Origin: Octopus sinensis
Taxonomy: Eukaryota
NCBI RefSeq assembly: GCF_006345805.1
Contig: NW_021825323.1
Location: 248,001 to 312,000, forward strand
Direction of reading: 5' to 3'
Length of the DNA: 64,000 nucleotides
In this document: in pieces, positions 23,501 to 60,914 of the stretch
Numbering within the stretch: the first letter of the stretch is position 1
Layout of the letters: each line of letters begins with the position of its first letter
Notes under the pieces: model-generated
What the model was told of the DNA's origin: nothing
What the model saw: the letters and a program-made list of their open reading frames with translations, nothing else
Database searches by the model: none
Program-made: the position numbers and the translations under genes

Positions 23501-23599
23501 TAGTGCGTAGGCCTTTGCTATAGTTAGACTATGCCTTCTAGCAGCTTGTTGGTGAGTACAGAGGATTAGCTTTTGGATGATTAACATGCATAAGGGTTC

Positions 23600-26570: not shown

Positions 26571-26574
26571 CATA

Positions 26575-38908: not shown

Positions 38909-40280
38909 TGTGACATAATTTGCGTGATGCCTATGGGCCGCGTGATACCTGACGTGACCTTGAAGCTTAACTTAATGTCAATATTGTAATTAATATGATA
39001 AAGTGTTTGAAAATGATAATTCCAGTGAATATGCAAACATATTTTTAAAATTACGAAAATCCCAGAAATGATCAGAATAGACACTCAAAATAGCTAATTA
39101 AGTGTCAGCAGTGGCTGCACCTCGGATTGCACGCGAGTTACCTCGCAAGATTGCGATCGATATCCTCTGGTACAGCCAGCCGATTTGGCGGTGGTCCTTC
39201 GTGCACTTGTGGATGCACTTCCCGATTTCGGTCAGAAGCGACACTCCGGCCGTCCCTATCACTGCACTTGTCTCCACAGCAATCGGGACAAAGTGGTAAT
39301 TTGGTGGGAGAGAGGCGTATTTCTTCCGCTTCGTCTCCTCAGACCGACGGGAAGCGAAGTCGGGGGAGGACGCAGACTGAGCAACGGTCCCGGGGGCAAA
39401 GGTGTCCGCGCAGGTAACATCCCAAACGAGACACTTCCCCTCCGAGAATGGAAAGACCGTCATTCCGTCTGGACGCTTGCCGTCGCCACGGTCGAGGCCG
39501 GCAGGCTCCAGAACAGAAGGGAAGCCTGCGGCATTGAGGGCCTGTTTAACGACGTGGTTCAGGCCAGCGTGTCTCGGGATACGCCCGGTGCTTAAGCGGC
39601 ACGAAAGGGGGTGGAGACCATCGGGGTCAATTATGTGGCCGCACTTGCACCGGTGAGGGTGGCAAAGGGGAATTTCCAGACGAAGACAGGTTCCGATTCG
39701 AGTCGATTCATCATCCAAGAGGAGGCCAGTAATTAATATTAAACTTCACAGAATAATAACTTGTTAATTATTTTTCAAGTCTGGACATTGGGACAATCGA
39801 AATTTCGCTCATCGAATTTTTTATCTATTAAATTTAAATGTTTAAACTACCTCAACGCGATTGTTTGATACAATTGTTCCAAAGTCTTTTTTAACTCGAA
39901 CCTAAACATTAATTTTTATGCATACTTTATCACCAACACTAAATTCATACTTACTATTGTGAACATTCATTTTTCTGTTCATCGCTTTGTAATAATTAGA
40001 ATTAGGATCAATGGGGTTGATTTCGAACTGAAATCTTTTCGGACTTGATAGAAATTCAAATTACATGAATTTTCAATTTGATTCGGACAATTGTTTGCAT
40101 CATCGACTTGATCAGGGCTCAACAAATCATTACTTGAATTATCTAAGGAATAATTTTATAATTACAACCATAAAATATTGTATTTATTCCACTTATTCCC
40201 CGGTATTTTTCAAAAGGGCTCTCATTAGAAGATGAGTGGACAGAAATGTTATAAGTAGAGCAACATTTTTATCTAAGTAG
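38909..40280 (-). mobile_element. Ginger2-like integrase element remnant
   Basis: Terminus TGTGACA...GGGCCGCGTGATACCTGACGTGACCTTGA shared with 56644; YNISVHSSSNESPFE and FSVGDK(intron)VRVKKDF. Confidence 0.7.
39090..39730 (-). mobile_element. CRE-like retrotransposon 3' portion (Zn knuckle plus REL), 5'-truncated
   Basis: HRCKCG, HPLSC, PRHAGLN, GKRPDG, WDVTCADT, AVETS and AILRGNS in an intact 206-aa ORF. Confidence 0.9.
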
Positions 40281-40287
40281 AGCAACT

Positions 40288-40628
40288 CCGGACGATCTTT
40301 GGTCTGGGACGCAACTTGCGTCGATACTTACTCAAGCACGAATCTCCTTAAATCGGTTCAGACACCTGGAGCAGCTGCCTCAATCGCGGAAAACCTTAAA
40401 ACCAAAAAATATTCCTTCCTCGGGGACCGCTACAGATTCACCCCTGTTGCGGCTGAGTCATCAGGAGCTGTTGGCCCAGCGACTGCCGAGTTCTTGCGCG
40501 AACTCGGAAGAATGCTCGCCACAAAGAAAAATGATCCTCGTGAAGGAGTATGGCTAAGACAAAGGATCGGAATAGCCATACTCCGAGGGAACTCGCTTTC
40601 CATACAGGCAGCGGGCTTCCTCAATTGA
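40288..40628 (+). mobile_element. CRE-like REL 3' fragment
   Basis: WDATCVDT, AAESSG and AILRGNSLSIQAAGFLN*. Confidence 0.85.
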
Positions 40629-42294: not shown

Positions 42295-45114
42295 GTGTCT
42301 GTCTGTCTGTCTGTCTGTGTGTGCACACCAACTTCAAATTGGCAATACGATGTCCTCGACTTACATGATGAGGTCCTTAAAACCTTCCCCCCAAAAAAAT
42401 TAAAAAAAATTTTTCTGCGTTTTGGTCAAAATGAACAACTACGATGTCCTCGACTTACATGATGAGGTCCTTAAAACCTTCCCCCCCAAAAAAAATTAAA
42501 AAAAAATTTTCTGCATTTTGGTTAAAATGAACAACTACAATGTCCTCGACTTAAATGATGAAGTCCTTAAAACCTTCCCCCCAAAAAAATTAAAAAAAAA
42601 TTTTCTGCATTTTGGTTAAAATGAACAACTACAATGTCCTCGACTTACATGATGAAGTCCTTAAAACTTCCCCCCAAAAAAAATTAAAAAAAAATTTTCT
42701 GCATTTTGGTTAAAATGAACAACTACAATGTCCTCGACTTACATGATGAAGTTCTTAAAACCTTCCCCCCAAAAAAATTAAAAAAAATTTTCTGCATTTT
42801 GGTTAAAATGAACAACTACAATGTCCTCGACTTACATGATGAAGTCCTTAAAACCTTCCCCCCAAAAAAAATTAAAAAAATTTTCTGCATTTTGGTTAAA
42901 ATGAACAACTACAATGTCCTCGACTTACATGATGAAGTCCTTAAAACCTTCCCCCCAAAAAAATTAAAAAAAATTTTCTGCATTTTGGTTAAAATGAACA
43001 ACTACGATGTCCTCGACTTACATGATGAAGTCCTTAAAACCTTCCCCCCAAAAAAATTAAAAAAAAATTTTCTGCATTTTGGTTAAAATGAACAACTACG
43101 ATGTCCTCGACTTACATGATGAAGTCCTTAAAACCTTCCCCCCAAAAAAAATTAAAAAAAATTTTCTGCATTTTGGTTAAAATGAACAACTACAATGTCC
43201 TCGACTTACATGATGAAGTCCTTAAAACCTTCCCCCCAAAAAAATTAAAAAAAAATTTTCTGCATTTTGGTTAAAATGAACAACTACAATGTCCTCGACT
43301 ACATGATGAAGTCCTTAAAACCTTCCCCCCAAAAAAATTAAAAAAAAATTTTCTGCATTTTGGTTAAAATGAACAACTACAATGTCCTCGACTTACATGA
43401 TGAGGTCCTTAAAACCTTCCCCCCAAAAAAAATTAAAAAAAATTTTTCTGCGTTTTGGTCAAAATGAACAACTACGATGTCCTCGACTTACATGATGAGG
43501 TCCTTAAAACCTTCCCCCCCAAAAAAATTAAAAAAAAATTTTCTGCATTTTGGTTAAAATGAACAACTACAATGTCCTCGACTTACATGATGAGGTCCTT
43601 AAAACCTTCCCCCCAAAAAAATTAAAAAAAAATTTTTCTGCGTTTTGGTCAAAATGAACAACTACGATGTCCTCGACTTACATGATGAGGTCCTTAAAAC
43701 CTTCCCCCCCAAAAAAAATTAAAAAAAAATTTTCTGCATTTTGGTTAAAATGAACAACTACAATGTCCTCGACTTACATGATGAAGTCCTTAAAACCTTC
43801 CCCCCCAAAAAAATTAAAAAAAATTTTCTGCATTTTGGTTAAAATGAACAACTACAATGTCCTCGACTTACATGATGAAGTCCTTAAAACCTTCCCCCCA
43901 AAAAAATTAAAAAAAAATTTTCTGCATTTTGGTTAAAATGAACAACTACAATGTCCTCGACTTACATGATGAAGTCCTTAAAACCTTCCCCACAAAAAAA
44001 ATTAAAAAAAAATTTTCTGCATTTTGGTTAAAATGAACAACTACAATGTCCTCGACTTACATGATGAAGTCCTTAAAACCTTCCCCCCAAAAAATCAAAA
44101 ATTATTTTCTGCATTTTGATTAAAATGAACAACGCGAATGTCCTCGACATTCATGATGAGGTCCATTAAAACCTTCAAGGCAAAAATCTCACGTATTAAG
44201 AATATCCTTGATGAAAACGACAGCGAGAATATTAACAATGATGAACTCCCAATTATTCGCGATAAAGAAATTCAATTCATCCTATGTTTTTCTCTTTAAA
44301 ATTAATTGCATATATCATTATCGACCATGAATCAAAATTAGAGCTATTATCATATTTGACTTTGACAGAATGTGCAATTAACAGATTTTTAAAAACACTT
44401 TGATAGTTGAAACCACATTAGCACAATCATTAACACAATTTACCACCAATTGACAGCGCAATCAGAAGAATTTGCGTAAAAATATTAACTATTTATTTGA
44501 GTTTTTCGTAAAGATAGAATTTATTTTCGGTATGCCTCTTTTCCTAAACTTTTTTATTATTCAAAAATAATTTTTTAAATAGATAACCGAAGGAGGAAAA
44601 ACGAAGCTGAAGAAAAAACGGTCAGCTTAATAAGGTAATTAATTAAATCTTTTTTGTGTGTCGCTTTTTTGTGTGTCGCTTTCTTGCCTGCCGCATCTCC
44701 CCCTGCCCCATTTCCGCCAGTAAAAAATAAAAAAAGAAAAAAAAGGAAATTACAAAGGAAAAATGAAAAAATTAAATATAAAAAAAAATAAACCACAAAA
44801 AATGAAAAAAAAAAGTTTGCAATGACAATAAACAAGGCCCAGGGACAGTCATTAAAGGTAGTTGGGTTATTTTTAGAGTGAGTGCTTTTCACATGGACAG
44901 CTGTATGTGGGATGCTCGAGGGTAGGCAGAAGAGAAAATTTATTCATATATGCCAAGGAAGGACGGACGACAAACATCGTTTATCAACAGGCGATAGAAT
45001 AGGGTTACATTAAACCAGGTAGTTTTATACATCTACATAAACTTATAGTTGTTTGATGAAACAGGCCCTCCGCAGGAGCTAGGTCGCGGTGAGCGAAGCG
45101 AGCTGCCGAGCTAG
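42238..45114 (+). mobile_element. Non-autonomous Helitron, copy 1
   Basis: 5' TCTTAATAATAAAATGG; (CTGT)n; 93-bp array; helicase C-terminal remnant; 3' GC-rich hairpin plus CTAG. Confidence 0.92.
42345..44170 (+). repeat. About 93-bp minisatellite, roughly 19-20 units
   Basis: Unit AAAATGAACAACTACAATGTCCTCGACTTACATGATGAAGTCCTTAAAACCTTCCCCCCAAAAAAATTAAAAAAAATTTTCTGCATTTTGGTT. Confidence 0.97.
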
Positions 45115-45409
45115 TACACTATAATTTAATTTAAAATTTGTTACAATAAGAGACAATGTCACTGCGACTATTTTAAATTTATTTGATGCTTTAAATAATA
45201 TTATTTAAATTTTATTTAAAAATTGACCTAATTAAAAAATTGACCTGTAAATCTAAAAAGTTGACCAAATTGACCTAAAGAACTTTTTATATAAACTTTT
45301 TTTTGACTTTATTTTAATTTAATCATTATTTTTAGACTTAAGTCTAACTCTGGATTGAAGTTGACTTTATTGACTTATGTTGCCCTAGTTATAAGTTATA
45401 ATACTTTAG

Positions 45410-46875
45410 AGACTATTTATTGAAAATGGGCATAACATAATTTTCCAAATTTTGTGTAACAAAGTTTCTGTTTGACCTCATAAAACTCCTAAATTGTGAA
45501 AAGCATCGTTCGATAGATGCCGAGGATGGTTGACAGTTTTGAAGTAACGAATAATCTTCCGGAGAGATATTTTTATTATCCATATTAATAATTTTAGTCA
45601 TATCGCTCTCTAAAATTATCTTCTCTAAATATTTTTTGATCCCTGCTTCATCCTTCCCGAAGTCAAGTGTACTTAACGTCGAATATGCAAATTCTATTGT
45701 ACATTCGTTACTTTCAAGTTGTAATATTTTCTCTATGAGATTAATTACTATATGAAAAACCTGGAATATGTGAATAGTTATGCGAAATTGCACATAAGCT
45801 TTTTACTAGTTTTTCACTTTTCAATGCATTTTTGGTGGCAGTCACTAGTATTCCTTCGTCCTCAATCAAATCAAAAATGTTAATCACTGAGATTAAATTT
45901 CTTGAATAAAAAGATGCAGCCTTTAACCAGGTGCCCCATCTCGTCAACACAACTTTCGGAGGAATTCCAATTTCGCAAAACAACAATTTTCGATTGTGGT
46001 TCTTCCTGACAGAAGCTTGCACGCTAGCTATCACATCATCAACTTCTGGATAAGATTTTCTGACCTCCATTGAACAATTATGCAAAATATGGGTGACGCA
46101 ATTAACATGAAAAAGACTGGGATATAAATTTTTTAAAATTTTCCCCGCTAAATCATCAATTAATTAAAACAATACCGGATGTCATATACCGTGCAGCATC
46201 GGAAATGAGAAGCATAAAATTATCCCGTTCAACCATAAGGTTTCGAATGGAATCATCAACGATCTGTGCTGATATTTTTTGTTGGCGCGGATTCGATTGG
46301 CTTGAATGAGACCAAATAAGTAATTGTAGGGAGTTTTCCCATCAAAACGGCGACATAACGTTTGTTTCGAATTTGAGTTTCATCGGTTATTGTAAAAATT
46401 TTTTGTTCTCTAGAAAATAAACTTTGATGGAATACTTGAATTTGTCCCTAAAAGATCCTATGTATTCATTTGCAATATATTTTCCACAATTCCTTGCTTG
46501 TGATTGCGAAGGAAGGGAAATTTTGTTGCTTTCGAAGAGATCAACAAATAAAGGCATTGATAATTTATTTAGCGGAATGTCACATTTCAGAAAAGCCTTA
46601 GTCACCCTCAAATTCCAGTTTCCAATTTCAGATTCATCTAATTTTTGTTGGCTAAATGTAGTCAAACGATCTATATATTATCGAAAAATCCTTACCAACG
46701 AAAGTCTTATGTTTCTTTGATATCCTATGGAGGTTAACAAAATGCTTTTTCGAGCACTTTACTGTCGTTAAGCATAGTTTACAAAACAATTCATCGTTGT
46801 TATTTAACTGAAATTCCTTTGGGAATTCGTTGACAATTAATTTTGCTTTAGTTAGACTTAGAAGTACGCGGCATA
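45410..46875 (-). mobile_element. Second CGGBP1-like hAT transposase, decayed
   Basis: LFCKLC, KAFLKCDIPLNKL, VVLTRWGTWL and SIERCFS motifs. Confidence 0.82.
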
Positions 46876-48520
46876 CAACAAAAACTTGTAATTTACACGC
46901 TGTTTAATATTTATTGTCACAGGCTGGATAATGCCCTGGGTTGGATAATACCCCCTTAAAAATTTTATTAAAATCAAACGAAAATAACCTGATAATTAAA
47001 AATAACTTGATAATGGAATTAAGTCGATTTATTCAATTTTTTATCAATTTTTTGATTGAATGAATTTTTCCAAGAGTCGACAAAAACAGGCATTACCAAT
47101 TTTTCCGAATCAATAACGTATTTTATCATAATTATACAATTTTTTAGGTCTACCATTTAAAAACAAATATTAAAAATTCATGAATTTTTATTATATAAAA
47201 ATTTTTTATAAGAGTCATTTTTTATACGACTTTTGTGTACATGTTTGGATGATTCGTCATTCAGATCGAGATAATCGGATCCAATTATCTCCGATTGACT
47301 TGATTCAACCGCTTCATTTCCATCGAATGACAATAACGCCGATCTTATTTCCTCCGGGATTAAATTATTTCCTCGCATAAAAATTTCGAAAGGTGTCCTC
47401 TTGGTCGTTTCATGCTTCGCCATGTTATATTTATAAACGATTTCTTGATAGAAGTCTTTATAGCTTGCGAAAGACCCATTTGAGGCACTAGTTGAGCTAA
47501 TCCACCTCTTGATCGATTGATTGAATCTAAAGATAAATTTACAAATAACTTGCCTTTCTACTTGACCCTGAATCCATGGTGCTTTAGGCGTCCACTTATG
47601 TGTATGATTTTCAGATCATTACACATTGTTTCCATACATTTGTTCTTAAATTTTTTTTTAAAACAGAGATTAATATGATAACTAGACAATGCAGTTATTT
47701 TGAACTGCCGGCGCATAAGATGGCCTGGCAGTTCCCTCGGACGATCGCCAACGAGACTCTTTGGAAAAGATGACGAGTCTCGTTGGGATCCTTGTTTCGT
47801 CTGGCAATCTTCGACCCCAGCCGACGAAGGAAAGAAAGCGATTCTGGGCCGATGACCCCGGATGTCTCTACGGCTACTGGCGCAAAAATGTGGTTTCTGG
47901 CCAGGTACGAGTATTTTCTTGTTTTTGTGACCTCCGCATGTCTTGCCGCTGAGCCGGGCTCAGCAGCTGATGAAATCAGGTTATGCGGGGAGAATGTGTC
48001 GGAGCATGTCGCGTCCCAGATGAGGCATTTCCGGTGATCGAAGGGAAATGTTGTCATGCCATCTGGGCGCTTTCCATCTCCGCGATCCAACCCGACTGGT
48101 TCCCCAGCACATTAGGGAATCCCGCAGATGCCAGGGCGCGGCTCACCACCTCCATTAAGCCCAGAGTGTCGAGGGAAACGTCCAGCGCTACGCCGGCAGG
48201 ATAGCGGGTGCAGTCCTAGGGTGTTCAATCATCTGGCCGCAGCGGCATTGATGTTCACGGCAGATGTTTGTCTCTATTTACTATGTCACATGCCTCAGGG
48301 ATTACTATGCCCACTCGTTACCTCCGAATTATTTCTGAGAAATAATGGATTAATGATTTTTCAATTTTTTAGAAAATTAATAATAATCACAACGAATAGG
48401 AATAGGAAGTTTTATTGGAAACAGAGAAGGGTTAAAGGTTAGGGGGGAGTTTGTATAATGAAACAATAGGACTACCCTATCGACTTCTTCCCAGAAAAAA
48501 AAAAAAAAGAGACCCCCTCA

Positions 48521-50490
48521 AGTAAATTTTTTTTTTTTTTTTTTTTTTTTCTTTTCTACCTCTGCAGGTACGTCCCAGTGACAATTGAGTTGGATTTATA
48601 ACCACTTATAGCTTTTTCGACAGTTTCACCGACCATGGAGGATTTACTTTCAAGCCACAGGGGGATTGGGTCTTCAACTTTTTGGTGGTAAGCAAGCTTC
48701 AAAGCGAGCCTGCGAGACTTTTCAAATTTAGTTAAGATGGTGTCCTTCTTTTTAGAGAAGTACCATCCCTCTTTTCCGTATAGTAGTCCCGGTAGGATCA
48801 CCGTATTGAAAACGTAGAGGAAAGTATCAGGCTCCAAATTTAACTTCCTCAGGCAGAACAGAGCATTAGTTGCTTTCCTTTTACTTAATTTTGCGTTTTC
48901 GAGATAGTTTCCCTTTTCATCGATGAACAAGCCAAGATATTTAATTGAGTTTTGTCGAGGTATGTTCTTGATCAGGCACGGTAAATTTATTAAATTTCTG
49001 CTTTCTGTGATTCTCAGTAATGCGGACTTCTCACGCGCAATAATGAACATATTTTCATCGCACCATTGCTCCACTGTATTCATATATGATATAATCCTTT
49101 GTTCGGATAAGGCAGGTTTCGATGAAATGTCAAGGATTACAACATCATCGGCGTATATCAAAATTTCCGTCCGTGTGTTGACAGGAGACGGCAGATTGCT
49201 CATCACAATGTTGAATAATAGAGGACTGAGGACTGATCCTTGAGGGACGCCTCTTTTAAGTTTCAGTTCATCCGAGTCATAGTTCAGAAAGCTTATCACA
49301 GAGCGCCTGTCGCGGAGGAAGTCTTTTAGCCATAGGAATAGTCCTTTGTCTATGTGACACTTCGCCAGATGTCTAAGGAGACCGAGGTGCCAAACCATAT
49401 CAAAGGCTTTTGAGATGTCTAGAGACACAATTGTCAGACACTCTTTGAAATCCAGAGCCTTTACAATCGACGAATTGAGTGTATAAAGACAGTCAGCACA
49501 GGAACGACCCCTCCGAAAGCCCCACTGCACGTCTTTGAGATAACCATTTCTCTCGACGTGTTCAGAGAGTCGTTCAACATTACCCTTTCCATTATTCGAC
49601 TGATGGTAGGAATTAGGCTTATAGGCCTATAACTTGTCGCCAAGTAACCAGGTTTTCCAGGCTTCCGTATCATCCTTACCTCCGTCAGTTTCCATGAAGA
49701 AGGGACGTATCCCAAGCTCACACTGCGGGAGAAGAGACATCCCAAATATTCGTAAAGTTGCTTGGGAGCTTCTTTGAACATGCGCATGGTTATCTTGTCC
49801 TTTCCCGGAGCGTTATTTTTGGATTCTAACTGCATTTTCCACGTCTTTGCACGTTATAGATTCCGAGCACATTGGTAATGAGCTAAGATTGTCTTCCAAC
49901 TCTTTTTCCATATCAAAAAAGCTGAATCAGATAGATTTGTATCCGGATTGACTTCTTGTATTCTTTTGAGACTATCAGCAAATATGTTCGGGATTTCTTC
50001 ATGAGATGCAGGGGATCCATCTTGTTTTAGCAGTTTAGGTATAGTTTTCTCAGACGTCGAGGTTAATTTCGAGTAGACCTTCCAAAATTTGGACTTCCTT
50101 TATGTAGCTTTTTGCACTCAGTATTCCATTTTTTATCCTTCGCCACCTTCGCCGATTTTCTTATTTCTTCCGTAATGGTGAAGATTTCACTTTCCAAAAC
50201 GGACCGGTCACGAAAATCTGCGCAGCGCCGGAGTTTGTTCCTTAGACATTGTTTTTTCCTTAGTAGGATTTCAACATTCATGTTTGGCATGTGAGTTTTC
50301 CTATTGTTTGAGACGATTTTTGTAGAATATGTTTCCAGATAAGACTTTATGTATCCAATAAGGGAATTGCTAGACTTCTCGAGGTCCTCAGATGAAGAAT
50401 TTTCGTCAAGTTTAGGAGCGAAATTGCTCAGATAAAGTGTAAAACATTTTCGGTAGTGTTCCCAGTTTATAGTCGACAACGACATAAAAA
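48521..50490 (-). mobile_element. 5'-truncated LINE with poly(A) tail, inside the MITE
   Basis: APGKDKI, YRPISL, DISKAFD, GVPQGS, IYADD and KYLG over 3 frameshifted ORFs; stop at 48556 followed almost directly by a long A-tract. Confidence 0.92.
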
Positions 50491-50909
50491 TTCAACCTAT
50501 ATATTAGGTTAATTAGAGTACAATTTAATGATATACTAAAAGATGCTTTAAACAAATAAATTAAAATATATTTTTATACAACAACCATTTTGACTGATAA
50601 GCACATTAAAACATATTTTAAAAATGTGAATTGTGTGAAACGCTTTAAAGGCACATAATTTGATAGTTTTATAATTAACTCTAACCAGTTTTTAGTTTTA
50701 TTTAAAACATTTTTTGAAATGTAAAAAGATAAAGGTTTAAAATCATCTGTAGATCTCTTATAAAAACTCAAACTTTATCCAGTTTTTTAGTTTAAAATCA
50801 TATATAGATCTGAAGTTTAAAACGAAAAATTAAATTTGTCCTTTTTTGATTCTTTTCATGTGAACAATCTTTGTATCTCCATTCGAAAATTCTACTTTAA
50901 ATTTTTTCA

Positions 50910-51227
50910 AACCCTAAACCCAACCCCAATTCCCTAACCTTCACCCTAACCTTCACCCAAACCCTAACCTCACACCAAACCTCACCCAAACCCTAACCTT
51001 CACCCTAACCCTAACCTTCACCCTAACCCTAACCTTCACCCTAACCCTAACCTTCACCCTAACCCTAACCTTCACCCTAACCCTAACCTTCACCCAAACC
51101 CTAACCTTCACCCAAACCCTAACCTTCACCCAAACCCTAACCTTCACCCTAACCCTAACCTTCACCCTAACCCTAACCTATACCCTAACCCTAACCTATA
51201 CCCTAACCTATACCCTAACCATAACCA
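50910..51227 (+). repeat. Interstitial telomere-like array of CCCTAA with CCTTCA, CCCAAA and CCTATA variants
   Basis: About 50 hexamers organised largely as 18-mers CCTTCA-CCC(T/A)AA-CCCTAA. Confidence 0.95.
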
Positions 51228-51468
51228 TGAGATAAAACAGCATGCTTAATTTATTGTTTTTTAATGATAATGGTTAAGCATTGAAAAAATAAAAATCCAT
51301 AATATTATTAATTTTTAAATTAATAAGTAAATATATTTCAATCATTAAAATATTTAAATTGAAATTTTAAAAATTAGAGCAATGGTAACGAGAGGGGCAT
51401 GGTAACGAACAGGGCATGTGACATACTATATCCATCTTTTTTACATTGCCTCAATTTAGCATATCCAC

Positions 51469-53496
51469 ATGGTACTACCTTTCTCTAAAAAGTCTCTCCT
51501 ATGCTCTTCGTGCAACTTAAGCAACCTGAGGAAGAACGGCTGCCTGTGTTCCTCCTGCAAAAGCTTCTTTCATCTTTCCTGTGCTGGAATCTCTAAATTG
51601 GCCGCTTCAACCTTGTCCAAATGGACCTGCCCCTCATGCCACCCTCTTGCCCGCGGTTCGCGGCCGGTGTCTTCCAAAATTCTTTCCGATTCCAATAATT
51701 CCCAACCAATTACACCCATCCTATCAGTGAAAGATTTCCTCTTGTCGGTTTCCCGAGCCAAAAGGGTCCGTACTATCCCAGTCAAAATACCTAAGGCTGC
51801 GCGCATTCTCTCGGCCGAGTCTTTATCATCCGTTATCAACAAAGCGCTTTCTTTTAACGACCCATCCAGCTGGAACCATCTTTTCTGTTTTGGCATAATG
51901 GCTCTCGGTCTCCCTAAAGAAGGCACCCATAAACAGTCCAGAGGCCATAACATCCATCCCATTTCTATTTCGTCGCGATTTAAGGCTAACATATTGGCCT
52001 ACATGCCTTGTCCCTCGGATTTCTCTAGTTGGCTAGGTGCCACAGAGAAGGCCCAACGGAAGAACCAGACGCACCAGCCCCGCGTCCTACAAAACGACGA
52101 GGCTATTAACCGTGACGCCATACGTCTACGTGAACGTGTAAACGGCCAACTACTGGAAGGAAACGTTGCCGGCGCTGTGCGAGTACTGGCATCTGATTCC
52201 AAGGCCCTCGAAATAACTCCCCAAATCCTTACAGAACTAAAAGCGAAGCACCCCAATCCTCCAGACGACCAACGGTCCCTTATCACCCATTCTGACCTTC
52301 CAATCTCACATGCCTCAGATGAGGAAGTCCTCAATGCCATTAATTCTCTTTCAACTGGTAGCTGTGGGGGCATAGACGGCCTCCGGCCCGGACACGTCAA
52401 AGACATGCTCTCTCCCCAAACCTGTGAAGCCGGTCAGCGCCTCCTATCGTCCCTAACGGCTCTTACGAACCGAATTTTGAACGGAGAAATCTCCGAGTAT
52501 GCCCGCGATCTATTTTTTGCCGCTAATCTCACTGCCCTGAGGAAAAAGGAAGGCGGTGTCCGTCCCATCGCCGTGGGTTGCCTCTTCCGCCGACTGGCGT
52601 CGAAGGTAGCTTGCAGACAAGCCATCAAATTGCTGGGGTCCGAATTACGCCCAATACAACTCGGCGTAGGAGTTCGGGGTGGCTGCGAAGCAGCAGTCCA
52701 CGCCACGAGGAAGTTTGTGATTGCCTCCCAAGATCGGCAAGACAAGCCTTGTCTTCTCATCAAGATAGACTTGGCTAATGCTTTCAACTGTGTGCGTCGT
52801 GACACTTTTTTCGAATCCGCTACCCGTCGCTGTCCAGCAATCTCCCGTCTCGTCGCGTTGGCCTACGGCCAGCCCAGCCTCCTTGTCGCTGGTAATCAGA
52901 CAATCCCGTCCAGTAATGGAGTACAGCAAGGTGACCCTTTGGGCCCTCTCCTTTTCGCTCTGGCTGTGGATAACGTTGCCAGGAATGTATCATCCAAATT
53001 CAACGTTTGGTACTTGGACGACGCCACCATATGTGGTACATCTGAATCCGTTCTTGATGACCTGAGAATCATAATCCCTTCATTGCACGCCATTGGTCTC
53101 GAAGTCAATTCCAATAAATCTGAAATCATAAACATCAGTTACGACCCGCACCATTTTTCCGATATTCTTCGTTCCTTCAACTCGCTTTTATCGAACATTC
53201 AAGTCACCACGCCATCGAATCTCAAGATTTTGGGCTCCCCCATATTCAACACTGGAGTGGATCAAACTCTGTCCGAAAAAACCTCGAATCTCATATCTAT
53301 GTCCAGTAAGCTCACGACAATTGATTCCCATGCGGCTTTATTTCTATTGAAGAATTGCTTCGCGATCCCCAAGCTAATGTTCACCCTCCGAAGTGCCCCC
53401 TGTTTTACAAATCACGTGGGCCTCTTCAGCTTCGACCGTGCCCTCAGGGCATGCCTCGAAGCAATTTGTAATGCCCCGTTTGATGACCTCGGCTAG
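51469..53496 (+). CDS. CRE-like ORF: PHD finger plus reverse transcriptase, premature stop
   Basis: C4HC3 CSSC...CSSC...H..C...W.CPSC; GGIDGLRP, RPIAVG, DLANAFN, QQGDPLGP and WYLDD; the frame continues past the TAG to ~53650. Confidence 0.92.
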   Translation: MVLPFSKKSLLCSSCNLSNLRKNGCLCSSCKSFFHLSCAGISKLAASTLSKWTCPSCHPLARGSRPVSSKILSDSNNSQPITPILSVKDFLLSVSRAKRVRTIPVKIPKAARILSAESLSSVINKALSFNDPSSWNHLFCFGIMALGLPKEGTHKQSRGHNIHPISISSRFKANILAYMPCPSDFSSWLGATEKAQRKNQTHQPRVLQNDEAINRDAIRLRERVNGQLLEGNVAGAVRVLASDSKALEITPQILTELKAKHPNPPDDQRSLITHSDLPISHASDEEVLNAINSLSTGSCGGIDGLRPGHVKDMLSPQTCEAGQRLLSSLTALTNRILNGEISEYARDLFFAANLTALRKKEGGVRPIAVGCLFRRLASKVACRQAIKLLGSELRPIQLGVGVRGGCEAAVHATRKFVIASQDRQDKPCLLIKIDLANAFNCVRRDTFFESATRRCPAISRLVALAYGQPSLLVAGNQTIPSSNGVQQGDPLGPLLFALAVDNVARNVSSKFNVWYLDDATICGTSESVLDDLRIIIPSLHAIGLEVNSNKSEIINISYDPHHFSDILRSFNSLLSNIQVTTPSNLKILGSPIFNTGVDQTLSEKTSNLISMSSKLTTIDSHAALFLLKNCFAIPKLMFTLRSAPCFTNHVGLFSFDRALRACLEAICNAPFDDLG

Positions 53497-54664
53497 GAGC
53501 AGGCAATCCTCCCGGTTAGCCACGGTGTCATCGGTGTGAGCTCTGCCGCCGATCTTTCCCTGCCAGCATTTCTTTCCTCTGTTCACGCCACCAGCTCTCT
53601 GGTCCACGAGATTCTCCAATCCACTATTGAATCCCCCGTGGACACTGATGCTGTTCTTAAATTCTTTCCCATTATCCGTCTTTAGAATAAATGGGGGACC
53701 AATCATGTAAAAAATATTCTTTAATTTTCTAGTAATTTCCTCCGCTGATTTCCGCCTGGCAAGTTTTACAACTGCGAATTTAGAAAATGAGTCTATAACC
53801 ACAACCAACTACAATTTATACAAAAAGAAATACCCATCCATTATCGCTATTAAGGCTAGCATAACTTTTAAATCTATCCCTTCCTCCTCGAAAATTAACT
53901 GTTCTGCTAATTTTCTGTATCTTTTTTTTCAGATTTCTGAAATCGGTCAATATAAAAAACATCTATTTGAATATTTTTGATTATTTCAAGTTCATCTTTG
54001 GTAAGGTTGAGTAAAACCATTTTTGAAATATAGATTTGATCGATTATACTTATTATTTTTTCAAATTGGAAAACTTAGATAACCAAAACAAATTTACCAC
54101 TTTTTATTATCATTGTCGATCATTTTTGCCATTTTTCTTGTAATTGACTGGTTGAAGCGTTCGACAATCCCTTGTGAGCGGAGATTGTTTGGCCTTCCGT
54201 GAATTCGTTTGATATTGAATTCCTCACATAGATTGGTCATTTCACGATTCTTGAATTCAGTCCCATTATCGGACTGAAGAAATTGACACGGACCATTTAA
54301 GAAAAATAATGATATGAGGTTTTCACAAACTTCATTTGAGGACTTAGTGTAGAGCGGCCTCGCAAATGCAAATCTATAAAAATTGTTAAAAAACTAACTT
54401 GCTATATACGTCAATGACCGTTAAAATCCATTTAAAATTTTTATTTATAGTAGAAAAACTTTTCAGATCTATAAGATCTATCTGAAATCTTTCATTTGGG
54501 CAAGATGCAAAGACATGGTTATTTATATCTCCAATCTAGGATTTAAAAAAGTTAAAACTTTTAAGGGTCGCGCAAATTCACAAATTTCACAGTTTCGAAT
54601 GACTTTTCGAATAATCTAATTTTTTTTCCTGAAATCACAATCTCTGAAAATTAATCATTTAGTA

Positions 54665-55002: not shown

Positions 55003-56534
55003 CAGCGGTTCTCAACCTTTTTTAGACTGGGGACCACTTTTGCACTATAAAATTTTGTGGGGACCACCTTAAATAAAATAAACATTTTTTGGTATTAGCG
55101 CACAATTTTTGGCCTCGTCAGGGCCGGGTTTAGACATGTTCGAATATTTATTATAAAAATAACATGAACATTATGAAAATAACAGAAAATTTAATAGTAA
55201 TTTAGTGAGATTTCTGATCTTGTTTGCTCAGAATAATTTTACTTATATCAGGCTCTATGTTCGACAAAGCTACTCGCATATCATCTTGTACCCGTAGTCT
55301 ATTTCTATATTTTGTTTTTAGAAAAGTCAGACACGACTTCGCCATTTCACAGTGATAAGTAGTGGGGAATGCAAGTATTGATTCCAATGCAGTTTTACTC
55401 AAAATGGGGAATTCTTTCGCCATCTGACACCTAACAATAAAAAGTAATTATTAATGAGAATACCAAAAATCTAATAATGAAGTACATTTAAAAATAATCT
55501 GAGCAGACTGATTACATTGAAGTTCAATCAAGCTCTGCTGAAAATTGAGTTCCTGATATTCTTTAAATGAGGTCAGGTTATTCTGCATTTACTTTTATTG
55601 ATTCTTTTAATTAATTGCTTCAGGATATCAGATGACAATTCTGAAATTCTACGGGAAATTGAATCGTTGAATAATGGTATGTCCTTAAGTTTGGTAACTG
55701 CATCCGGACCAAACAAAATTCGAGCCATTTCAAGAGCCGCTGGTTTGATTAACTTTTCACCAGAATTATGTGCAGCTTTTTTTTGCGATAATCATTGAGA
55801 CCTATTTGTTTTAGATATAAATTAAAATTACAGCATATGATGCTTCTAATCTCGGTTTATCTTGAGATTTATTAAACCACTCAAGCTTTGGCTGTGAATC
55901 AAACTTCGTTCTTTTGACTTTAAAATATTCATGTGAGGAAGAATTTTCTGGGTGTACAGACTCTTTGTGGCGCCTAAGTTGAGAAGGTTTCAGTGAATTG
56001 TTTCCCAAAATTTTATGGCAAATCATGCATTTTGCCTTTATTTCATTATTTGGGGCAATGAATTTAGTGAATCCAAATTGTACGTAAGAATCCGACCAAA
56101 GACGACGATTCTTGTTAACCATAACTAGAATGATAACCACGCTAATCAAATCAGATTAATTTCAATGTTTTTGATTTATACTTAATTGTACAATTAGTTT
56201 TAAATTTAATATATTGTTATTTTTCGAAAATTCCTGGGGACCACTAAAAATTTTCTGGGGACCACGATTGAGAACCGCTTGATTAATTTCAATGTTTTTG
56301 ATTTATACTTAATTGTACAATTAGTTTTAACTTTAATATATTTTTATTTTTCGAAAATTCCTGGGGACCACTAAAAATTTTCTGGGGACCACGATTGAGA
56401 ACCGCTTGATTAATTTCAATGTTTTTGATTTATACTTAATTGTACAATTAGTTTTAACTTTAATATATTTTTATTTTTCGAAAATTCATGGGGACCACTA
56501 AAAATTTTCTGGGGACCACGGTTGAGAACCGCTG
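55003..56534 (-). mobile_element. hAT Buster-like element, internally deleted
   Basis: TIR CAGCGGTTCTCAACC; 8-bp TSD CTGTAAAG; CMIC..LKPSQLRRH, GEKLIKPAA and FPTTYHCE motifs. Confidence 0.93.
56155..56534. repeat. Tandem triplication (about 127 bp) of the hAT terminal region
   Basis: TTAATTTCAATG...GGGACCACG.TTGAGAACCGCT repeated three times. Confidence 0.9.
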
Positions 56535-56747: not shown

Positions 56748-58195
56748 TACGATGTCCTCGACTTACATGATGAGGTCCTTAAAACCTTCCCCCCCAAAAA
56801 AATTAAAAAAAAATTTCTGCATTTTGGTTAAAATGAACAACTACAATGTCCTCGACTTACATGATGAAGTCCTTAAAAACTTCCCCCCCAAAAAATTAAA
56901 AAAAAATTTTCTGCATTTTGGTTAAAATGAACAACTACAATGTCCTCGACTTACATGATGAAGTCCTTAAAACCTTCCCCCCAAAAAAAATTAAAAAAAA
57001 TTTTCTGCATTTTGGTTAAAATGAACAACTACAATGTCCTCGACTTACATGATGAGGTCCTTAAAACCTTCCCCCCCAAAAAAATTAAAAAAAAATTTTC
57101 TGCATTTTGGTTAAAATGAACAACTACAATGTCCTCGACTTACATGATGAAGTCCTTAAAACCTTCCCCCCCAAAAAAATTAAAAAAAAATTTTCTGCAT
57201 TTTGGTTAAAATGAACAACTACAATGTCCTCGACTTACATGATGAAGTCCTTAAAACCTTCCCCCCAAAAAAAATTAAAAAAAAATTTTCTGCATTTTGG
57301 TTAAAATGAACAACTACAATGTCCTCGACTTACATGATGAAGTCCTTAAAACCTTCCCCCCCAAAAAAATTAAAAAAAAATTTTCTGCATTTTGGTTAAA
57401 ATGAACAACTACAAGTCCTCGACTTACATGATGAAGTCCTTAAAACCTTCCCCCCCAAAAAAATTAAAAAAATTTTCTGCATTTTGGTTAAAATGAACAA
57501 CTACAATGTCCTCAACTTACATGATGAAGTCCTTAAAACCTTCCCCCCCAAAAAATTAAAAAAAAATTTTCTGCATTTTGGTTAAAATGAACAACTACAA
57601 TGTCCTCGACTTACATGATGAAGTCCTTAAAACCTTCCCCCCCAAAAAAATTAAAAAAAATTTTCTGCATTTTGGTTAAAATGAACAACTACAATGTCCT
57701 CGACTTACATGATGAAGTCCTTAAAACCTTCCCCCCAAAAAAATTAAAAAAAAAATTCTGCATTTTGGTTAAAATGAACAACTACAATGTCCTCGACTTA
57801 CATGATGAAGTCCTTAAAACCTTCCCCCCAAAAAAATTAAAAAAAATTTTCTGCATTTTGGTTAAAATGAACAACTACAATGTCCTCAACTTACATGATG
57901 AAGTCCTTAAAACCTTCCCCCCAAAAAAATTAAAAAAAAATTTCTGCATTTTGGTTAAAATGAACAACTACAATGTCCTCAACTTACATGATGAAGTCCT
58001 TAAAACCTTCCCCCCCAAAAAAAATTAAAAAAAAATTTTCTGCATTTTGGTTAAAATGAACAACTACAATGTCCTCGACTTACATGATGAAGTCCTTAAA
58101 ACCTTCCCCCCAAAAAATCAAAAAATTATTTTCTGCATTTTGATTAAAATGAACAACGCGAATGTCCTCGACATTCATGATGAGGTCCATTAAAA
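56748..58195 (+). repeat. 93-bp minisatellite, roughly 15-16 units
   Basis: Same unit as the array at 42345. Confidence 0.97.
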
Positions 58196-58226
58196 CCTTC
58201 AAGGCAAAAATCTCACGTATTAAGAA

Positions 58227-60914
58227 CTAGCTCGGCAGCTCGCTTCGCTCACCGCGACCTAGCTCCTGCGGAGGGCCTGTTTCATCAAACAACTATAAGT
58301 TTATGTAGATGTATAAAACTACCTGGTTTAATGTAACCCTATTCTATCGCCTGTTGATAAACGATGTTTGTCGTCCGTCCTTCCTGGCATATATGAATAA
58401 ATTTTCTCTTCTGCCTACCCTCGAGCATCCCACATACAGCTGTCCATGTGAAAAGCACTCACTCTCTAAAAATAACCCAACTACCTTTAATGACTGTCCC
58501 TGGGCCTTGTTTATTGTCATTGCAAAACTCATCCTCAAAGGAAATTGCAGCCTTTTAAATCTAAATGGTAATTCATCAGAAATTATCGGAATTCGTGGAA
58601 TATAAACATCCTCACCTCAATACTTACCTGTTAATATCGTCGCCTCTATTACGTTAGCCATCTTTCTTCAGCTTCATTTTTCCTCCTTCGGTTATCTATT
58701 TAAAAAATTATTTTTGAATAATAAAAAATATTAGGAAAAAAGAGGCATACAGAAAATAAATTCTATCTTTACGAAAAACTTCTTTTCTTAAGTCGTCTTC
58801 CCTCTTTCGGTTATCTATTGAAAAAATTATTTTTGAATAATAAAAAAATTTAGGAAAAGAGGCATACCGAAATAAATTCTATCTTCACGAAAAACTTAAC
58901 TAAATAGCTAATATTTTTACGCAAATTCTTCTGATTGCGCTGTCAATTGGTGGTAAATTGTGTTAATGATTGTGCTAATGTGGTTTCAACTATCAAAGTG
59001 TTTTTCAAAATCAGTTAATTGCACACTCTATTCAAGGTCGTGCGTCAATTGGTGGTAAATTGTGTTAATGATTGTGCTAATCTGGTTTCAACTATCAAAG
59101 TGGTTTTTCAAAATCTGTTAATTGCACACTCTATTCAAAGTCGTGCAATCTGTGATTGCACATTCTGTCAAAGTCAAATATGATAATAGCTTTAATTTTG
59201 ATTCATGGTCGATAATGATATATGCATTTAATTTTAAAGAGAAAAACATAGGATGAATTGAATTTCTTTATCGCGAATAATGGGAGTTCATCATTGTTAA
59301 TATTCTCGCTGTCGTTTTCATCAAGGATATTCTTAATACGTGAGATTTTTGCCTTGAAGGTTTTAATGGACCTCATCATGAATGTCGAGGACATTCGCGT
59401 TGTTCATTTTAATCAAAATGCAGAAAATAATTTTTTGATTTTTTGGGGGGAAGGTTTTAAGGACTTCATCATGTAAGTCGAGGACATTGTAGTTGTTCAT
59501 TTTAACCAAAATGCAGAAAATTTTTTTTTAATTTTTTTTGGGGGGGAAGGTTTTAAGGACTTCATCATGTAAGTTGAGGACATTGTAGTTGTTCATTTTA
59601 ACCAAAATGCAGAAAATTTTTTTTAATTTTTTTGGGGGGAAGGTTTTAAGGACTTCATCATGTAAGTCGAGGACATTGTAGTTGTTCATTTTAACCAAAA
59701 TGCAGAAAATTTTTTTTTAATTTTTTTGGGGGGAAGGTTTTAAGGACTTCATCATGTAAGTCGAGGACATTGTAGTTGTTCATTTTAACCAAAATGCAGA
59801 AATTTTTTTTTAATTTTTTTTGGGGGGAAGGTTTTAAGGACTTCATCATGTAAGTCGAGGACATTGTAGTTGTTCATTTTAACCAAAATGCAGAAAATTT
59901 TTTTTAATTTTTTTTGGGGGGAAGGTTTTAAGGACTTCATCATGTAAGTCGAGGACATTGTAGTTGTTCATTTTAACCAAAATGCAGAAAATTTTTTTTA
60001 ATTTTTTTTGGGGGGAAGGTTTTAAGGACTTCATCATGTAAGTTGAGGACATTGTAGTTGTTCATTTTAACCAAAATGCAGAAAATTTTTTTTAATTTTT
60101 TTGGGGGGAAGGTTTTAAGGACTTCATCATGTAAGTCGAGGACATTGTAGTTGTTCATTTTAACCAAAATGCAGAAATTTTTTTTTAATTTTTTTTGGGG
60201 GGAAGGTTTTAAGGACTTCATCATGTAAGTCGAGGACATTGTAGTTGTTCATTTTAACCAAAATGCAGAAAATTTTTTTTTAATTTTTTTTGGGGGGGAA
60301 GGTTTTAAGGACTTCATCATGTAAGTCGAGGACATTGTAGTTGTTCATTTTAACCAAAATGCAGAAAATTTTTTTTTAATTTTTTTGGGGGGAAGGTTTT
60401 AAGGACTTCATCATGTAAGTCGAGGACATTGTAGTTGTTCATTTTAACCAAAATGCAGAAAATTTTTTTTTAATTTTTTTTGGGGGGAAGGTTTTAAGGA
60501 CCTCATCATGTAAGTCGAGGACATTGTAGTTGTTCATTTTAACCAAAATGCAGAAAATTTTTTTTAATTTTTTTTGGGGGGAGGTTTTAAGGACTTCATC
60601 ATGTAAGTCGAGGACATTGTAGTTGTTCATTTTAACCAAAATGCAGAAAATTTTTTTTTAATTTTTTTGGGGGGGAAGGTTTTAAGGACTTCATCATGTA
60701 AGTCGAGGACATTGTAGTTGTTCATTTTAACCAAAATGCAGAAAATTTTTTTTAATTTTTTTGGGGGGGAAGGTTTTAAGGACCTCATCATGTAAGTCGA
60801 GGACATCGTATTGCCAATTTGAAGTTGGTGTGCACACACAGACAGACAGACAGACAGACAGACACACAGAGACACACACAGACAGACACACACCATACCA
60901 TTTTATTATTAAGA
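58227..60914 (-). mobile_element. Non-autonomous Helitron, copy 3, nested and inverted
   Basis: Minus strand A|TCTT...CTAG|T with no TSD; splits the host sequence AAGAA^TATCC. Confidence 0.93.
59355..60810 (-). repeat. 93-bp minisatellite, roughly 15-16 units, inverted
   Basis: Reverse complement of the same unit. Confidence 0.97.

What the first reader, a model, noticed from the sequence alone, without database searches (positions are those of the whole stretch)
48284..51423. Mobile DNA element that carries telomere-type repeat arrays
The CCCTAA-variant array lies inside a TGT...ACA element delimited by TIRs and a TACTA TSD. The opposite end has a short mirror remnant (GGGTTAAAGGTTAGGGG, ~48429-48446), so the G-rich strand runs inward from both termini. 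Such an element would spread interstitial telomeric seeds that could bind telomere proteins, form G-quadruplexes, or act as breakage and healing sites. This is especially relevant if the host undergoes programmed DNA elimination, as reported for dicyemids (host identity is inference).
Basis: partly seen in the sequence, partly recalled or inferred. Interest (0 to 1): 0.7.

Follow-up and report, generated by a model that had tools for sequence, protein, structure and literature searches.

The report
Octopus transposon carrying a telomere-like minisatellite
A 3.1-kb piece of mobile DNA with matching inverted ends really does sit here and really does contain a telomere-like repeat. The host is an octopus rather than a dicyemid, the repeat is an ordinary expanded minisatellite, and only this one copy could be found, so nothing shows that it spreads working telomere seeds.

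Summary
Window 48284-51423 is a discrete 3,140-bp insert. It has perfect 11-bp inverted termini (TGTCACATGCC...GGCATGTGACA), extending imperfectly to about 40 bp as two tandem 17-bp units at each end, and a perfect 5-bp duplication, TACTA.

Its ends coincide with boundaries defined independently. It sits in the roughly 55-bp junction of a 5'-inverted ("twin-primed") PHD-RT LINE, which has its own 12-bp duplication inside an integrase pseudogene. Chance TIR plus TSD at those boundaries is about 1e-6 to 1e-5.

About 62% of the insert is a dead, 5'-truncated second LINE with a poly(A) tail. The CCCTAA array (50903-51224) is an 18-bp higher-order minisatellite, (CCCTAA CCCTAA CCTTCA)n. It never has more than two pure hexamers in a row, so it was not made by telomerase. 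A 17-nt mirror motif does exist in the left arm.

The window shares repeats at 80-97% identity with Octopus sinensis. It is octopus, not dicyemid.

TGT...ACA ends with a 5-bp duplication point to an integrase-type element. I favour a non-autonomous Ginger2/TDD-like transposon, with a solo LTR as the main rival.

No second copy was found in any accessible data, so family-wide carriage of the array and any telomere-related role remain untested.

The parts
47178..47640 (-). C-terminal half of the integrase (rve) pseudogene that hosts the whole nest
   Evidence: Translation. When joined to 53664-53810, the rve core scores 33.7 bits against a 32.6-bit cut-off.
47641..47652 (.). Left copy of the 12-bp target duplication TGTTCTTAAATT of the flanking LINE
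   Evidence: Removing 47653-53663 restores the in-frame integrase sequence DNGKEFKNKCME.
47653..48278 (-). LINE arm B: a short A tail (seen as a T-run on the + strand), the 3'UTR, and the C-terminal domain corresponding to residues 805-985 of the 985-aa relative P0002
   Evidence: tblastn 48228->47683, E = 7e-56. DNA homology to O. sinensis L009 reaches 48268. Two stop codons and one frameshift are present.
48279..48283 (.). Left copy of the 5-bp target duplication TACTA of element X
48284..48322 (+). Left inverted terminus: TGTCAC followed by two tandem 17-bp units
48429..48445 (+). Left-arm telomere-like motif GGGTTAAAGGTTAGGGG, with the G strand running inward
   Evidence: Inverted pair I4 and the 8-mer census.
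48527..48555 (-). Poly(A) tail of the nested LINE-2, seen as a T-run on the + strand
   Evidence: TRF and the sequence itself.
48556..50485 (-). Nested LINE-2: a 5'-truncated non-LTR reverse transcriptase broken into three reading frames
   Evidence: RVT_1, E = 1.8e-30. ORFs listed. Best solved relatives are R2 and LINE-1 reverse transcriptases. No relative above 39% identity.
50486..50902 (.). AT-rich, non-coding body of X containing short local duplications
50903..51224 (-). Telomere-like minisatellite with 18-bp unit CCCTAA CCCTAA CCTTCA. The G-rich strand is the minus strand, running inward from the right end
   Evidence: TRF, tiling, pattern scan.
51384..51423 (-). Right inverted terminus: two tandem 17-bp units followed by GTGACA
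   Evidence: (17-bp period at 51382-51418).
51424..51428 (.). Right copy of the TACTA duplication
51429..53651 (+). LINE arm A: about 40 bp of leader and an intact 675-aa ORF (PHD finger plus reverse transcriptase), corresponding to residues 1-701 of the family
   Evidence: ORF 51469-53496. PHD and RVT_1 domains. tblastn 51502->53643, E = 2e-177. Homology ends at 53648.
53652..53663 (.). Right copy of the 12-bp LINE duplication TGTTCTTAAATT
53664..53810 (-). N-terminal part of the interrupted integrase core

Best explanation
Window 48284-51423 (element X) is one intact insertion of a non-autonomous mobile element of the integrase (rve/DDE) type, in an octopus genome.

Mechanism (inferred). An rve-family enzyme supplied in trans binds the paired 17-bp units in the two roughly 40-bp inverted ends. 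It exposes the terminal CA-3' ends and joins them to the target with a 5-bp stagger. Gap repair then produces the TACTA duplication. I favour a Ginger2/TDD-like cut-and-paste transposon over a solo LTR because tandem binding-site-like units occur in inverted orientation at both ends.

Where it landed (shown). X sits in the roughly 55-bp junction of a 5'-inverted (twin-primed) PHD-RT LINE, about 45 bp upstream of that LINE's intact ORF. The LINE had earlier inserted, with a 12-bp duplication, into an integrase pseudogene.

Passengers. X carries two.
- A dead, 5'-truncated LINE with a poly(A) tail. It probably entered an ancestral copy of X, because it is more decayed than the LINE arm A that X interrupts.
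- A 322-bp minisatellite. It most likely grew by slippage or unequal exchange on an 18-bp unit, (CCCTAA)2 CCTTCA, seeded from a short telomere-like motif that both arms contain.

The array is a by-product, not a functional telomere module.
For: - Ends and duplication: 11/11 inverted repeat plus 5/5 duplication; 33 of 42 identical over the extended ends, with two 17-bp units at each.
- A TA-only duplication (Tc1/mariner style) would need five extra base coincidences to mimic TACTA on both sides. This follows from reading the sequence.
- Independent boundaries: LINE arm B ends at 48268-48278 and arm A's ORF starts at 51469. Chance TIR plus TSD at those spots is about 1e-6 to 1e-5.
- Nesting order: a 12-bp duplication flanks arm B + X + arm A, and removing all of it restores an in-frame rve core. 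The arms cover residues 805-985 on the minus strand and 12-701 on the plus strand, placed head to head.
- Nested LINE-2: RVT_1 domain, poly(A) tail, three broken reading frames.
- Array structure: 18-bp higher-order repeat, runs of identical units, and blocks of the variants CCCAAA (x3) and CCTATA (x3); the longest pure run is 12 bp.
- Mirror motif.
- Family features: TGTNR termini with 4-5-bp duplications and AT-rich targets characterise Ginger2/TDD and LTR elements (PMC2836005).
- Octopus host. TTAGGG is the cephalopod telomere motif (PMC13218726).
Against: - Only one copy is known, so mobility as a family, the identity of the transposase and the original content of the element are all inferred.
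- The inverted ends (about 40 bp) are shorter than the 50-180 bp reported for Ginger2, and metazoan Ginger2 elements make 4-bp, not 5-bp, duplications.
- Inverted similarity beyond the termini is not significant.
- No rve gene lies inside X. Nearby integrase fragments do not share its termini.
- No convincing duplication flanks the nested LINE-2. The best candidate is 9/10 in AT-rich sequence.
- Landing exactly at the LINE inversion junction is an unexplained coincidence.
Confidence: 0.6

Rival explanations
1. X is a solo LTR. An LTR retrotransposon (Gypsy or BEL type) inserted here, and recombination between its two LTRs left a single LTR of about 1.2 kb, which also acquired the LINE-2 insertion. 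The minisatellite would be a U3-type internal tandem repeat.
For: TGT...ACA termini, a 5-bp duplication and short inverted ends are the textbook LTR signature (PMC2836005; PMC6839031 notes that most LTR elements make 5-bp duplications). LTR-type integrase fragments are present in the window. Solo LTRs are generally far commoner than Ginger-type elements (general knowledge).
Against: Two tandem 17-bp units in inverted orientation at both ends, giving about 40 bp of inverted similarity, are more than LTR ends usually show. No matching LTR or internal region occurs elsewhere in the window. LINE-2 looks older than the LINE arm A that X interrupts, which fits carriage inside a moving DNA element better than a later hit on a resident LTR. 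That last point is a weak inference.
Confidence: 0.3
2. X is not an insertion at all. It is filler made during the twin-priming event, either by the reverse transcriptase switching templates to other RNAs or by 5' transduction of upstream sequence, and the inverted ends and TACTA repeats are chance.
For: X sits exactly at the inversion junction. The T-run followed by antisense LINE-2 has the orientation expected if the arm-B cDNA jumped onto a polyadenylated LINE-2 RNA.
Against: The probability of an inverted repeat of at least 11 bp with an adjoining 5-bp direct repeat falling on the two arm boundaries is about 1e-6 to 1e-5. The extended 17-bp units at both ends are also unexplained. If the 5' transduction carried a real X copy, X would still be a mobile element.
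Confidence: 0.04
3. The array is a relic of telomerase action: a healed break, or repair-associated insertion of telomeric repeats, inside pre-existing DNA.
For: Interstitial telomeric repeats inserted at repaired breaks are documented in vertebrates (PMC7215372 and PMC2246262, listed). The hexamer matches the cephalopod telomere motif.
Against: There are never more than two pure hexamers in a row. The period is a strict 18 bp with every third hexamer CCTTCA, and variant units occur in blocks. Those are marks of unequal exchange or slippage, not of templated hexamer addition. A matching motif lies in the opposite arm in mirror orientation.
Confidence: 0.04
4. One reading: X belongs to an active family that disperses functional telomere-like seeds (sites for telomere proteins, G-quadruplexes, breakage or healing sites) through the genome.
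For: The array offers 8 TTAGGGTTA sites and 14 TAGGGTT sites. It holds 7 of the 8 long-loop G4 motifs on the window's minus strand; the plus strand has none. The perfect duplication and perfect 11-bp ends suggest a fairly recent insertion.
Against: No second copy was found in the window, in 113 kb of O. sinensis, or in any searchable collection. Only one canonical G4 motif (loops of 7 nt or less) is present. The host is an octopus, for which I know of no programmed DNA elimination.
Confidence: 0.08

Closest known systems
Ginger2/TDD DNA transposons (integrase-related cut-and-paste elements; Bao, Kapitonov and Jurka 2010, PMC2836005)
   Same: Termini follow TGTNR...YNACA (here TGTCA...TGACA). 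The target is short and AT-rich. TDD-4 and TDD-5 make a 5-bp duplication. The ends are inverted rather than direct.
   Different: Reported inverted ends are 50-180 bp, against about 40 bp here. Metazoan Ginger2 elements make 4-bp duplications in RTATAY targets. No transposase gene lies inside X, and no autonomous partner was identified.
Solo LTRs of Gypsy/BEL retrotransposons
   Same: TG...CA ends, a 5-bp duplication, short inverted termini, and frequent internal tandem repeats.
   Different: Both ends carry two tandem 17-bp units in inverted orientation. No partner LTR or internal region was found.
Tandem-repeat-containing MITE-like elements of molluscs (e.g. elements linked to the BIV160 and oyster HindIII satellites; table in PMC6947457)
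   Same: A non-autonomous element from a mollusc whose body holds an expandable tandem array.
   Different: Here the unit derives from the telomere hexamer. The ends are integrase-type, and the element is 3.1 kb because of a nested LINE.
Telomere-bearing elements (TBE) of Oxytricha, and telomere-attached retroelements (Athena and other endonuclease-deficient Penelope-like elements)
   Same: Mobile DNA physically associated with telomere-type repeats.
   Different: In those elements the repeats lie at the very termini with the G strand pointing outward, and they serve as or attach to real ends (my own knowledge). Here the array starts 200 bp inside the right end and the G strand points inward.
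L1 twin priming (5' inversion of LINE insertions; Ostertag and Kazazian 2001, from my own knowledge)
   Same: This applies to the flanks. Two segments of one LINE lie head to head, about 100 codons are lost between them, one poly(A) end is present, and a single duplication flanks the whole.
   Different: Twin priming was described for endonuclease-type L1. Here the LINE has a PHD finger and an R2-like reverse transcriptase, with a C-terminal domain that I read as a restriction-like nuclease by motif only.

Membership tests
Ginger2/TDD DNA transposon (non-autonomous member) | Termini 5'-TGTNR ... YNACA-3' | tested here: met
   TGTCA...TGACA; criterion taken from PMC2836005.
Ginger2/TDD DNA transposon (non-autonomous member) | Target duplication of 4 bp (metazoan Ginger2) or 5 bp (TDD-4/5) in AT-rich sequence | tested here: inconclusive
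   The duplication is the 5-bp TACTA in the AT-rich context TTTACTATAT. That matches TDD-4/5 but not the 4-bp duplication or the RTATAY target of metazoan Ginger2.
Ginger2/TDD DNA transposon (non-autonomous member) | Terminal inverted repeats of about 50-180 bp | tested here: not met
   Only about 40 bp are significantly inverted. Beyond that the similarity is not significant.
Ginger2/TDD DNA transposon (non-autonomous member) | Mobilised by an rve-type transposase that has no reverse transcriptase or RNase H, carried by an autonomous relative with the same ends | not testable with these tools
   No octopus genome could be searched at the DNA level. Integrase fragments in the window do not share the termini.
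Solo LTR | TG...CA ends with a 4-6-bp duplication | tested here: met
Solo LTR | Sequence matches the LTRs of a full-length element, as direct repeats flanking gag-pol | not testable with these tools
   No match in the window or in 113 kb of O. sinensis. The whole genome was not searchable.
Telomerase-added interstitial telomeric sequence | Head-to-tail run of exact telomere hexamers | tested here: not met
   The longest pure run is two hexamers, and the period is a strict 18 bp.
Telomere-bearing or telomere-attached mobile elements | Telomere repeats at the extreme termini with the G strand running outward | tested here: not met
   The array lies 200-520 bp inside the right end and the left motif 146-162 bp inside the left end. 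In both, the G strand runs inward.
Twin-primed (5'-inverted) LINE insertion (applies to the flanks) | Two non-overlapping segments of one LINE head to head, one poly(A) end, and one duplication flanking both | tested here: met
   Residues 805-985 on the minus strand and 12-701 on the plus strand. The 12-bp TGTTCTTAAATT occurs at 47641-47652 and 53652-53663. The host reading frame is restored on removal.
   Several repeat families are shared with Octopus sinensis GCA_006345805.1 at 80-97% identity. The best protein hits are O. sinensis. No dicyemid sequence was available for direct comparison.

The most novel reading that the evidence does not exclude
X represents a so far undescribed octopus family of integrase-type (Ginger-like) non-autonomous DNA transposons whose two arms intrinsically carry telomere-derived repeats. 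Transposition would then scatter expandable arrays with TTAGGGTTAGGG sites, which are potential binding sites for telomere proteins, across the chromosomes.
Probability: 0.15. Interest if true: 0.55.

Novelty: new member of a known kind. Interest (0 to 1): 0.3.

Why it matters
If the family exists in many copies and all carry the array, it would be a concrete, sequence-defined case of an old proposal: that transposable elements seed interstitial telomeric sequences (see PMC9693754). It would be in a cephalopod, a group whose repeat biology is poorly charted.

As it stands, the value is mostly in annotation. The nest is cleanly resolved: an integrase pseudogene, then a twin-primed LINE, then the element with inverted ends carrying a dead LINE and a minisatellite. 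The host assignment is corrected to octopus. The locus also shows that a telomere-like tract can be an ordinary minisatellite.

Tried and rejected
- Second copy inside the window. I searched the 11-mer terminus, the 17-bp unit and the whole non-LINE body. Only chance or AT-rich matches appeared.
- Public collections. The terminus pattern gave 6 hits in JGI metagenomes, all unrelated by blastn, and none in the bacterial and archaeal genomes. The 36-bp double unit of the array gave no hit in viral or prokaryotic genome contigs.
- Spurious-ORF trick. Stop-free translations of X's non-coding parts, searched against 5.8 billion proteins, gave no hit even at E = 10.
- LINE-2 ORF used to pull out sister copies of the composite. 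Nothing exceeded 39% identity.
- Sampling O. sinensis DNA around relatives of the flanking LINE. Five loci totalling 113 kb held no X, no LINE-2 and no telomere-like array. One further locus (L008) came from an unrelated organism.
- Long degenerate inverted arms (about 170 bp): rejected as not significant.
- A Tc1/mariner-type TA duplication: rejected, because a 5/5 TACTA on both sides would need five extra base coincidences.
- A two-LTR element: rejected, because the ends share no direct repeat.
- A duplication flanking LINE-2: only a weak 9/10 candidate in AT-rich sequence, 68 bp beyond the coding homology.
- Microhomology at the arm A end that might confirm internal priming: not informative.
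- Restriction-like nuclease domain of the flanking LINE. The sequence search of solved structures aligned only the reverse-transcriptase region to R2 proteins, so that domain call rests on motif reading alone.
Full report
**What is at the coordinates.**
The sequence reads ...ATT TACTA|TGTCACATGCC... at 48279-48294 and ...GGCATGTGACA|TACTA TATCC... at 51413-51428. The repeat finder returns this pair as I7, and the 11-mer occurs nowhere else in the window without a mismatch.

Aligning the left end with the reverse complement of the right end gives 33 identical positions in 42 columns, starting at the first base of both. Each end is TGTCAC followed by two tandem 17-bp units: ATGCCCTGTTCGTTACC and ATGCCCCTCTCGTTACC on the right, and ATGCCTCAGGGATTACT and ATGCCCACTCGTTACC on the left.

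Beyond about 42 bp the inverted similarity is no better than shuffled sequence. In one search, 44 of 2000 shuffles reach the observed score, and the direct-orientation control scores nearly the same. I therefore do not accept long degenerate inverted arms.

The duplication is 5 bp. TACTA is nearly palindromic, but its central C matches in direct orientation, not in inverted orientation. A TA-only duplication of the Tc1/mariner kind would need five further base coincidences to produce TACTA on both sides.

**The array.**
TRF reports period 18, 15.2 copies and 92% matches at 50943-51208. Tiling shows the unit CCCTAA CCCTAA CCTTCA.
- Five identical units come first.
- Three units follow with CCCAAA as the first hexamer.
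- One standard unit follows.
- Three units carry CCTATA as the last hexamer; the last of the three has lost a hexamer and is out of register.
- The inner (left) side of the array, 50903-51002, is degenerate.

There are 26 perfect CCCTAA hexamers but never more than two in a row. This is the pattern left by slippage or unequal exchange on an 18-bp unit, not by telomerase.

TTAGGG is the experimentally determined cephalopod telomere motif (PMC13218726), so "telomere-derived" is a fair description.

On the G strand there are 8 TTAGGGTTA sites. Only one canonical G4 motif (loops of 7 nt or less) is present. G4 motifs are numerous only if loops of 9-12 nt are allowed.

The mirror motif GGGTTAAAGGTTAGGGG is real (pair I4). 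GGTTAGGG occurs outside the array only at 48437 (+) and 28247 (-) in the whole window.

**What fills the element.**
The stretch 48556-50485 on the minus strand encodes a non-LTR reverse transcriptase (RVT_1, E = 1.8e-30). It is split into three reading frames of 140, 124 and 324 aa. It lacks an endonuclease and the 5' part, and it ends in a poly(A) tail, seen as a T-run at 48527-48555.

This nested, dead, 5'-truncated LINE (LINE-2) makes up 62% of the 3,140 bp. Its closest solved relatives are R2 and LINE-1 reverse transcriptases. Nothing in the 5.8-billion-protein collection exceeds 39% identity. I found no convincing duplication around it.

The remaining roughly 1.2 kb is non-coding and AT-rich, apart from the ends and the array.

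**The flanks give independent boundaries.**
The right flank opens at 51469 with an uninterrupted 675-aa ORF carrying a PHD finger and a reverse transcriptase. The left flank, on the opposite strand, encodes the C-terminal domain of the same LINE family.

A tblastn search with a 985-aa relative (P0002) places residues 12-701 at 51502->53643 (+) and residues 805-985 at 48228->47683 (-).

The minus-strand piece ends in a short 3'UTR and an A tail at 47653-47659. Next to that tail lies TGTTCTTAAATT (47641-47652), and the same 12-mer lies at 53652-53663, three bases after the end of the plus-strand piece.

Deleting 47653-53663 joins the two halves of an integrase core in frame (...TDNGKEFKNKCMETMC...). 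The joined sequence passes Pfam's rve threshold, 33.7 against 32.6 bits.

So arm B + X + arm A occupy one target site with one duplication. This is the signature of a LINE insertion with a 5' inversion ("twin priming", known from L1 by my own knowledge), here with about 100 codons lost between the arms.

DNA alignment to an uninverted O. sinensis copy (L009) shows arm B homology up to 48268, and possibly to 48278. X therefore lies within the roughly 55 unassigned bases between the two arm ends.

**Is the TIR plus TSD chance?**
A scan for any inverted repeat of at least 9 bp with an adjoining 5-bp direct repeat, at spacings of 300-8000 bp, finds X. It also finds a dozen AT-only pairs and the large satellite inverted repeats.

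Block-shuffled windows give about 6 such pairs at 9 bp or more, and about 0.6 at 11 bp or more. That is about 1e-9 per position pair. For the 1,000-6,000 position pairs compatible with the two LINE-arm boundaries, the chance is about 1e-6 to 1e-5.

I conclude that X is a genuine, discrete insert with inverted ends and a target duplication, and that it arrived after the LINE. There is one variant I cannot exclude. The LINE transcript may have started just upstream of an X copy at the source locus and carried it along by 5' transduction. Even then, X is a real element.

**What kind of element.**
TGT...ACA ends with a 5-bp duplication are the hallmark of integrase (rve) chemistry. LTR retrotransposons show it, and so do the Ginger/TDD DNA transposons, whose ends follow TGTNR. 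TDD-4/5 make 5-bp duplications, and metazoan Ginger2 elements make 4-bp duplications in AT-rich RTATAY targets with 50-180-bp inverted ends (PMC2836005; see also PMC6839031).

X has no direct repeats at its ends, so it is not a two-LTR element. The choice is between a non-autonomous Ginger2/TDD-like transposon and a solo LTR.

I lean to the transposon, roughly 2:1, because both ends carry two tandem 17-bp units in inverted orientation. That looks like repeated binding sites for a transposase and is more than LTR ends usually show. It fails the TIR-length criterion of Ginger2, and the duplication length fits only the TDD branch. I therefore do not file it as a member, only as working like one.

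The mechanism (binding, cleavage at CA-3', 5-bp staggered strand transfer, gap repair) is inferred from those families, not shown here.

**Order of events.**
Shown by nesting:
1. The integrase gene was present and decayed.
2. The PHD-RT LINE inserted by twin priming.
3. X inserted at the junction.

Inferred: LINE-2 has at least two disabling breaks in 1.9 kb, whereas arm A, which X interrupts, has none in 2.0 kb. LINE-2 therefore probably entered X before X came here and travelled as a passenger. This is weak evidence, because LINE copies can be defective from birth.

**Host.**
- The flanking LINE's best hits are Octopus sinensis proteins, at 77% and 75% identity.
- A 22-kb O. sinensis locus (L007) shares a 1.4-kb repeat at 96.6% identity, the 94-bp satellite at about 80%, and several other repeat families with the window.
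- A second O. sinensis locus (L009) behaves likewise.

The window is octopod DNA. The exact species is not determined, and it is probably not the annotated O. sinensis assembly itself, because the intact 675-aa ORF has no near-identical protein there. The dicyemid and DNA-elimination angle is therefore not supported.

**Copy number could not be tested.**
No tool here searches octopus genomes at the DNA level. Every indirect route was negative:
- the window itself;
- 113 kb of O. sinensis;
- metagenome, viral and prokaryote contigs;
- translated pseudo-ORFs of X;
- the LINE-2 protein.

The 113-kb sample only bounds the family at roughly below ten thousand copies per genome.

What the single copy shows:
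- The array has been expanding locally on an 18-bp unit.
- A telomere-like motif exists in both arms in mirror orientation (probability about 0.005). This mildly favours an intrinsic seed over a one-off acquisition.

**Unexplained.**
X sits at the inversion joint and about 45 bp upstream of arm A's intact ORF. Possible reasons are chance, a preference of integrase-type elements for promoter-proximal open chromatin (a LINE leader is its promoter), or capture of an excised element during junction repair. One copy cannot decide between them.

**Verdict.**
The feature is an ordinary kind of thing: a non-autonomous element (or solo LTR) with an internal minisatellite, in a dense octopus transposon nest. 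Its unusual detail is that the minisatellite is built from the telomere hexamer. Interest is modest unless a genome-wide search shows a family that carries the array.

Noticed in passing
window 47653-53651 (duplications at 47641-47652 and 53652-53663): A PHD-finger/R2-like-RT LINE inserted with a 5' inversion (twin priming), flanked by the 12-bp duplication TGTTCTTAAATT, inside an integrase pseudogene. Arm A keeps an intact 675-aa ORF, while arm B has two stop codons and a frameshift in about 600 nt.
   Followed up: yes
window 22929-26620 (+): A rearranged rDNA-like pseudogene. Small-subunit rRNA model positions 4-605 are followed within 170 bp by large-subunit positions 665-1888 and then 1890-3399, the latter compressed into 856 bp. 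There is no 5.8S or ITS. A 164-bp tandem repeat lies just upstream (22435-22814). Part of it matches O. sinensis L007 at 86% identity.
   Followed up: no
window 42346-44176 (+), 56748-58200 (+), 59356-60810 (inverted): Three arrays of a 94-bp satellite (15-19 units, about 95% internal identity). Each lies next to a (TGTC)n microsatellite; the arrays at 56748-58200 and 59356-60810 also lie near a two-copy repeat of about 117 bp. The last two arrays form a large inverted repeat. The same satellite occurs at about 80% identity in O. sinensis L007 1-1512, so it belongs to a dispersed repeat family.
   Followed up: partly
window 54100-54600 (-), 55100-56150 (-), 45300-46700 (-): A second integrase core (rve, 46 bits) lies directly upstream of the interrupted one, on the same strand. 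Pieces resembling zf-BED/hAT-type transposases lie on either side. Whether the integrases belong to LTR elements or to Ginger-like transposons was not resolved.
   Followed up: partly
window 39107-39730 (-), 40287-40613 (+), 34374-34514 (-): Three further 3'-terminal fragments of the same PHD-RT LINE family (50-70% amino-acid identity to P0002). This shows the family is abundant locally.
   Followed up: no
window 62778-63509 (+) and 15744-16295 (+): ORFs for a Tc1-type transposase (DDE_3 plus HTH_Tnp_Tc3_2) and for a pogo-type DNA-binding domain (HTH_Tnp_Tc5).
   Followed up: no
window 48494-48555: An A15 run, 18 bases (GAGACCCCCTCAAGTAAA), then a T-run of about 29 form a perfect 14-16-bp hairpin-capable inverted repeat at the 3' junction of the nested LINE-2. 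The origin of the A-run is unclear; it could be a second short retroposed fragment or target sequence.
   Followed up: no
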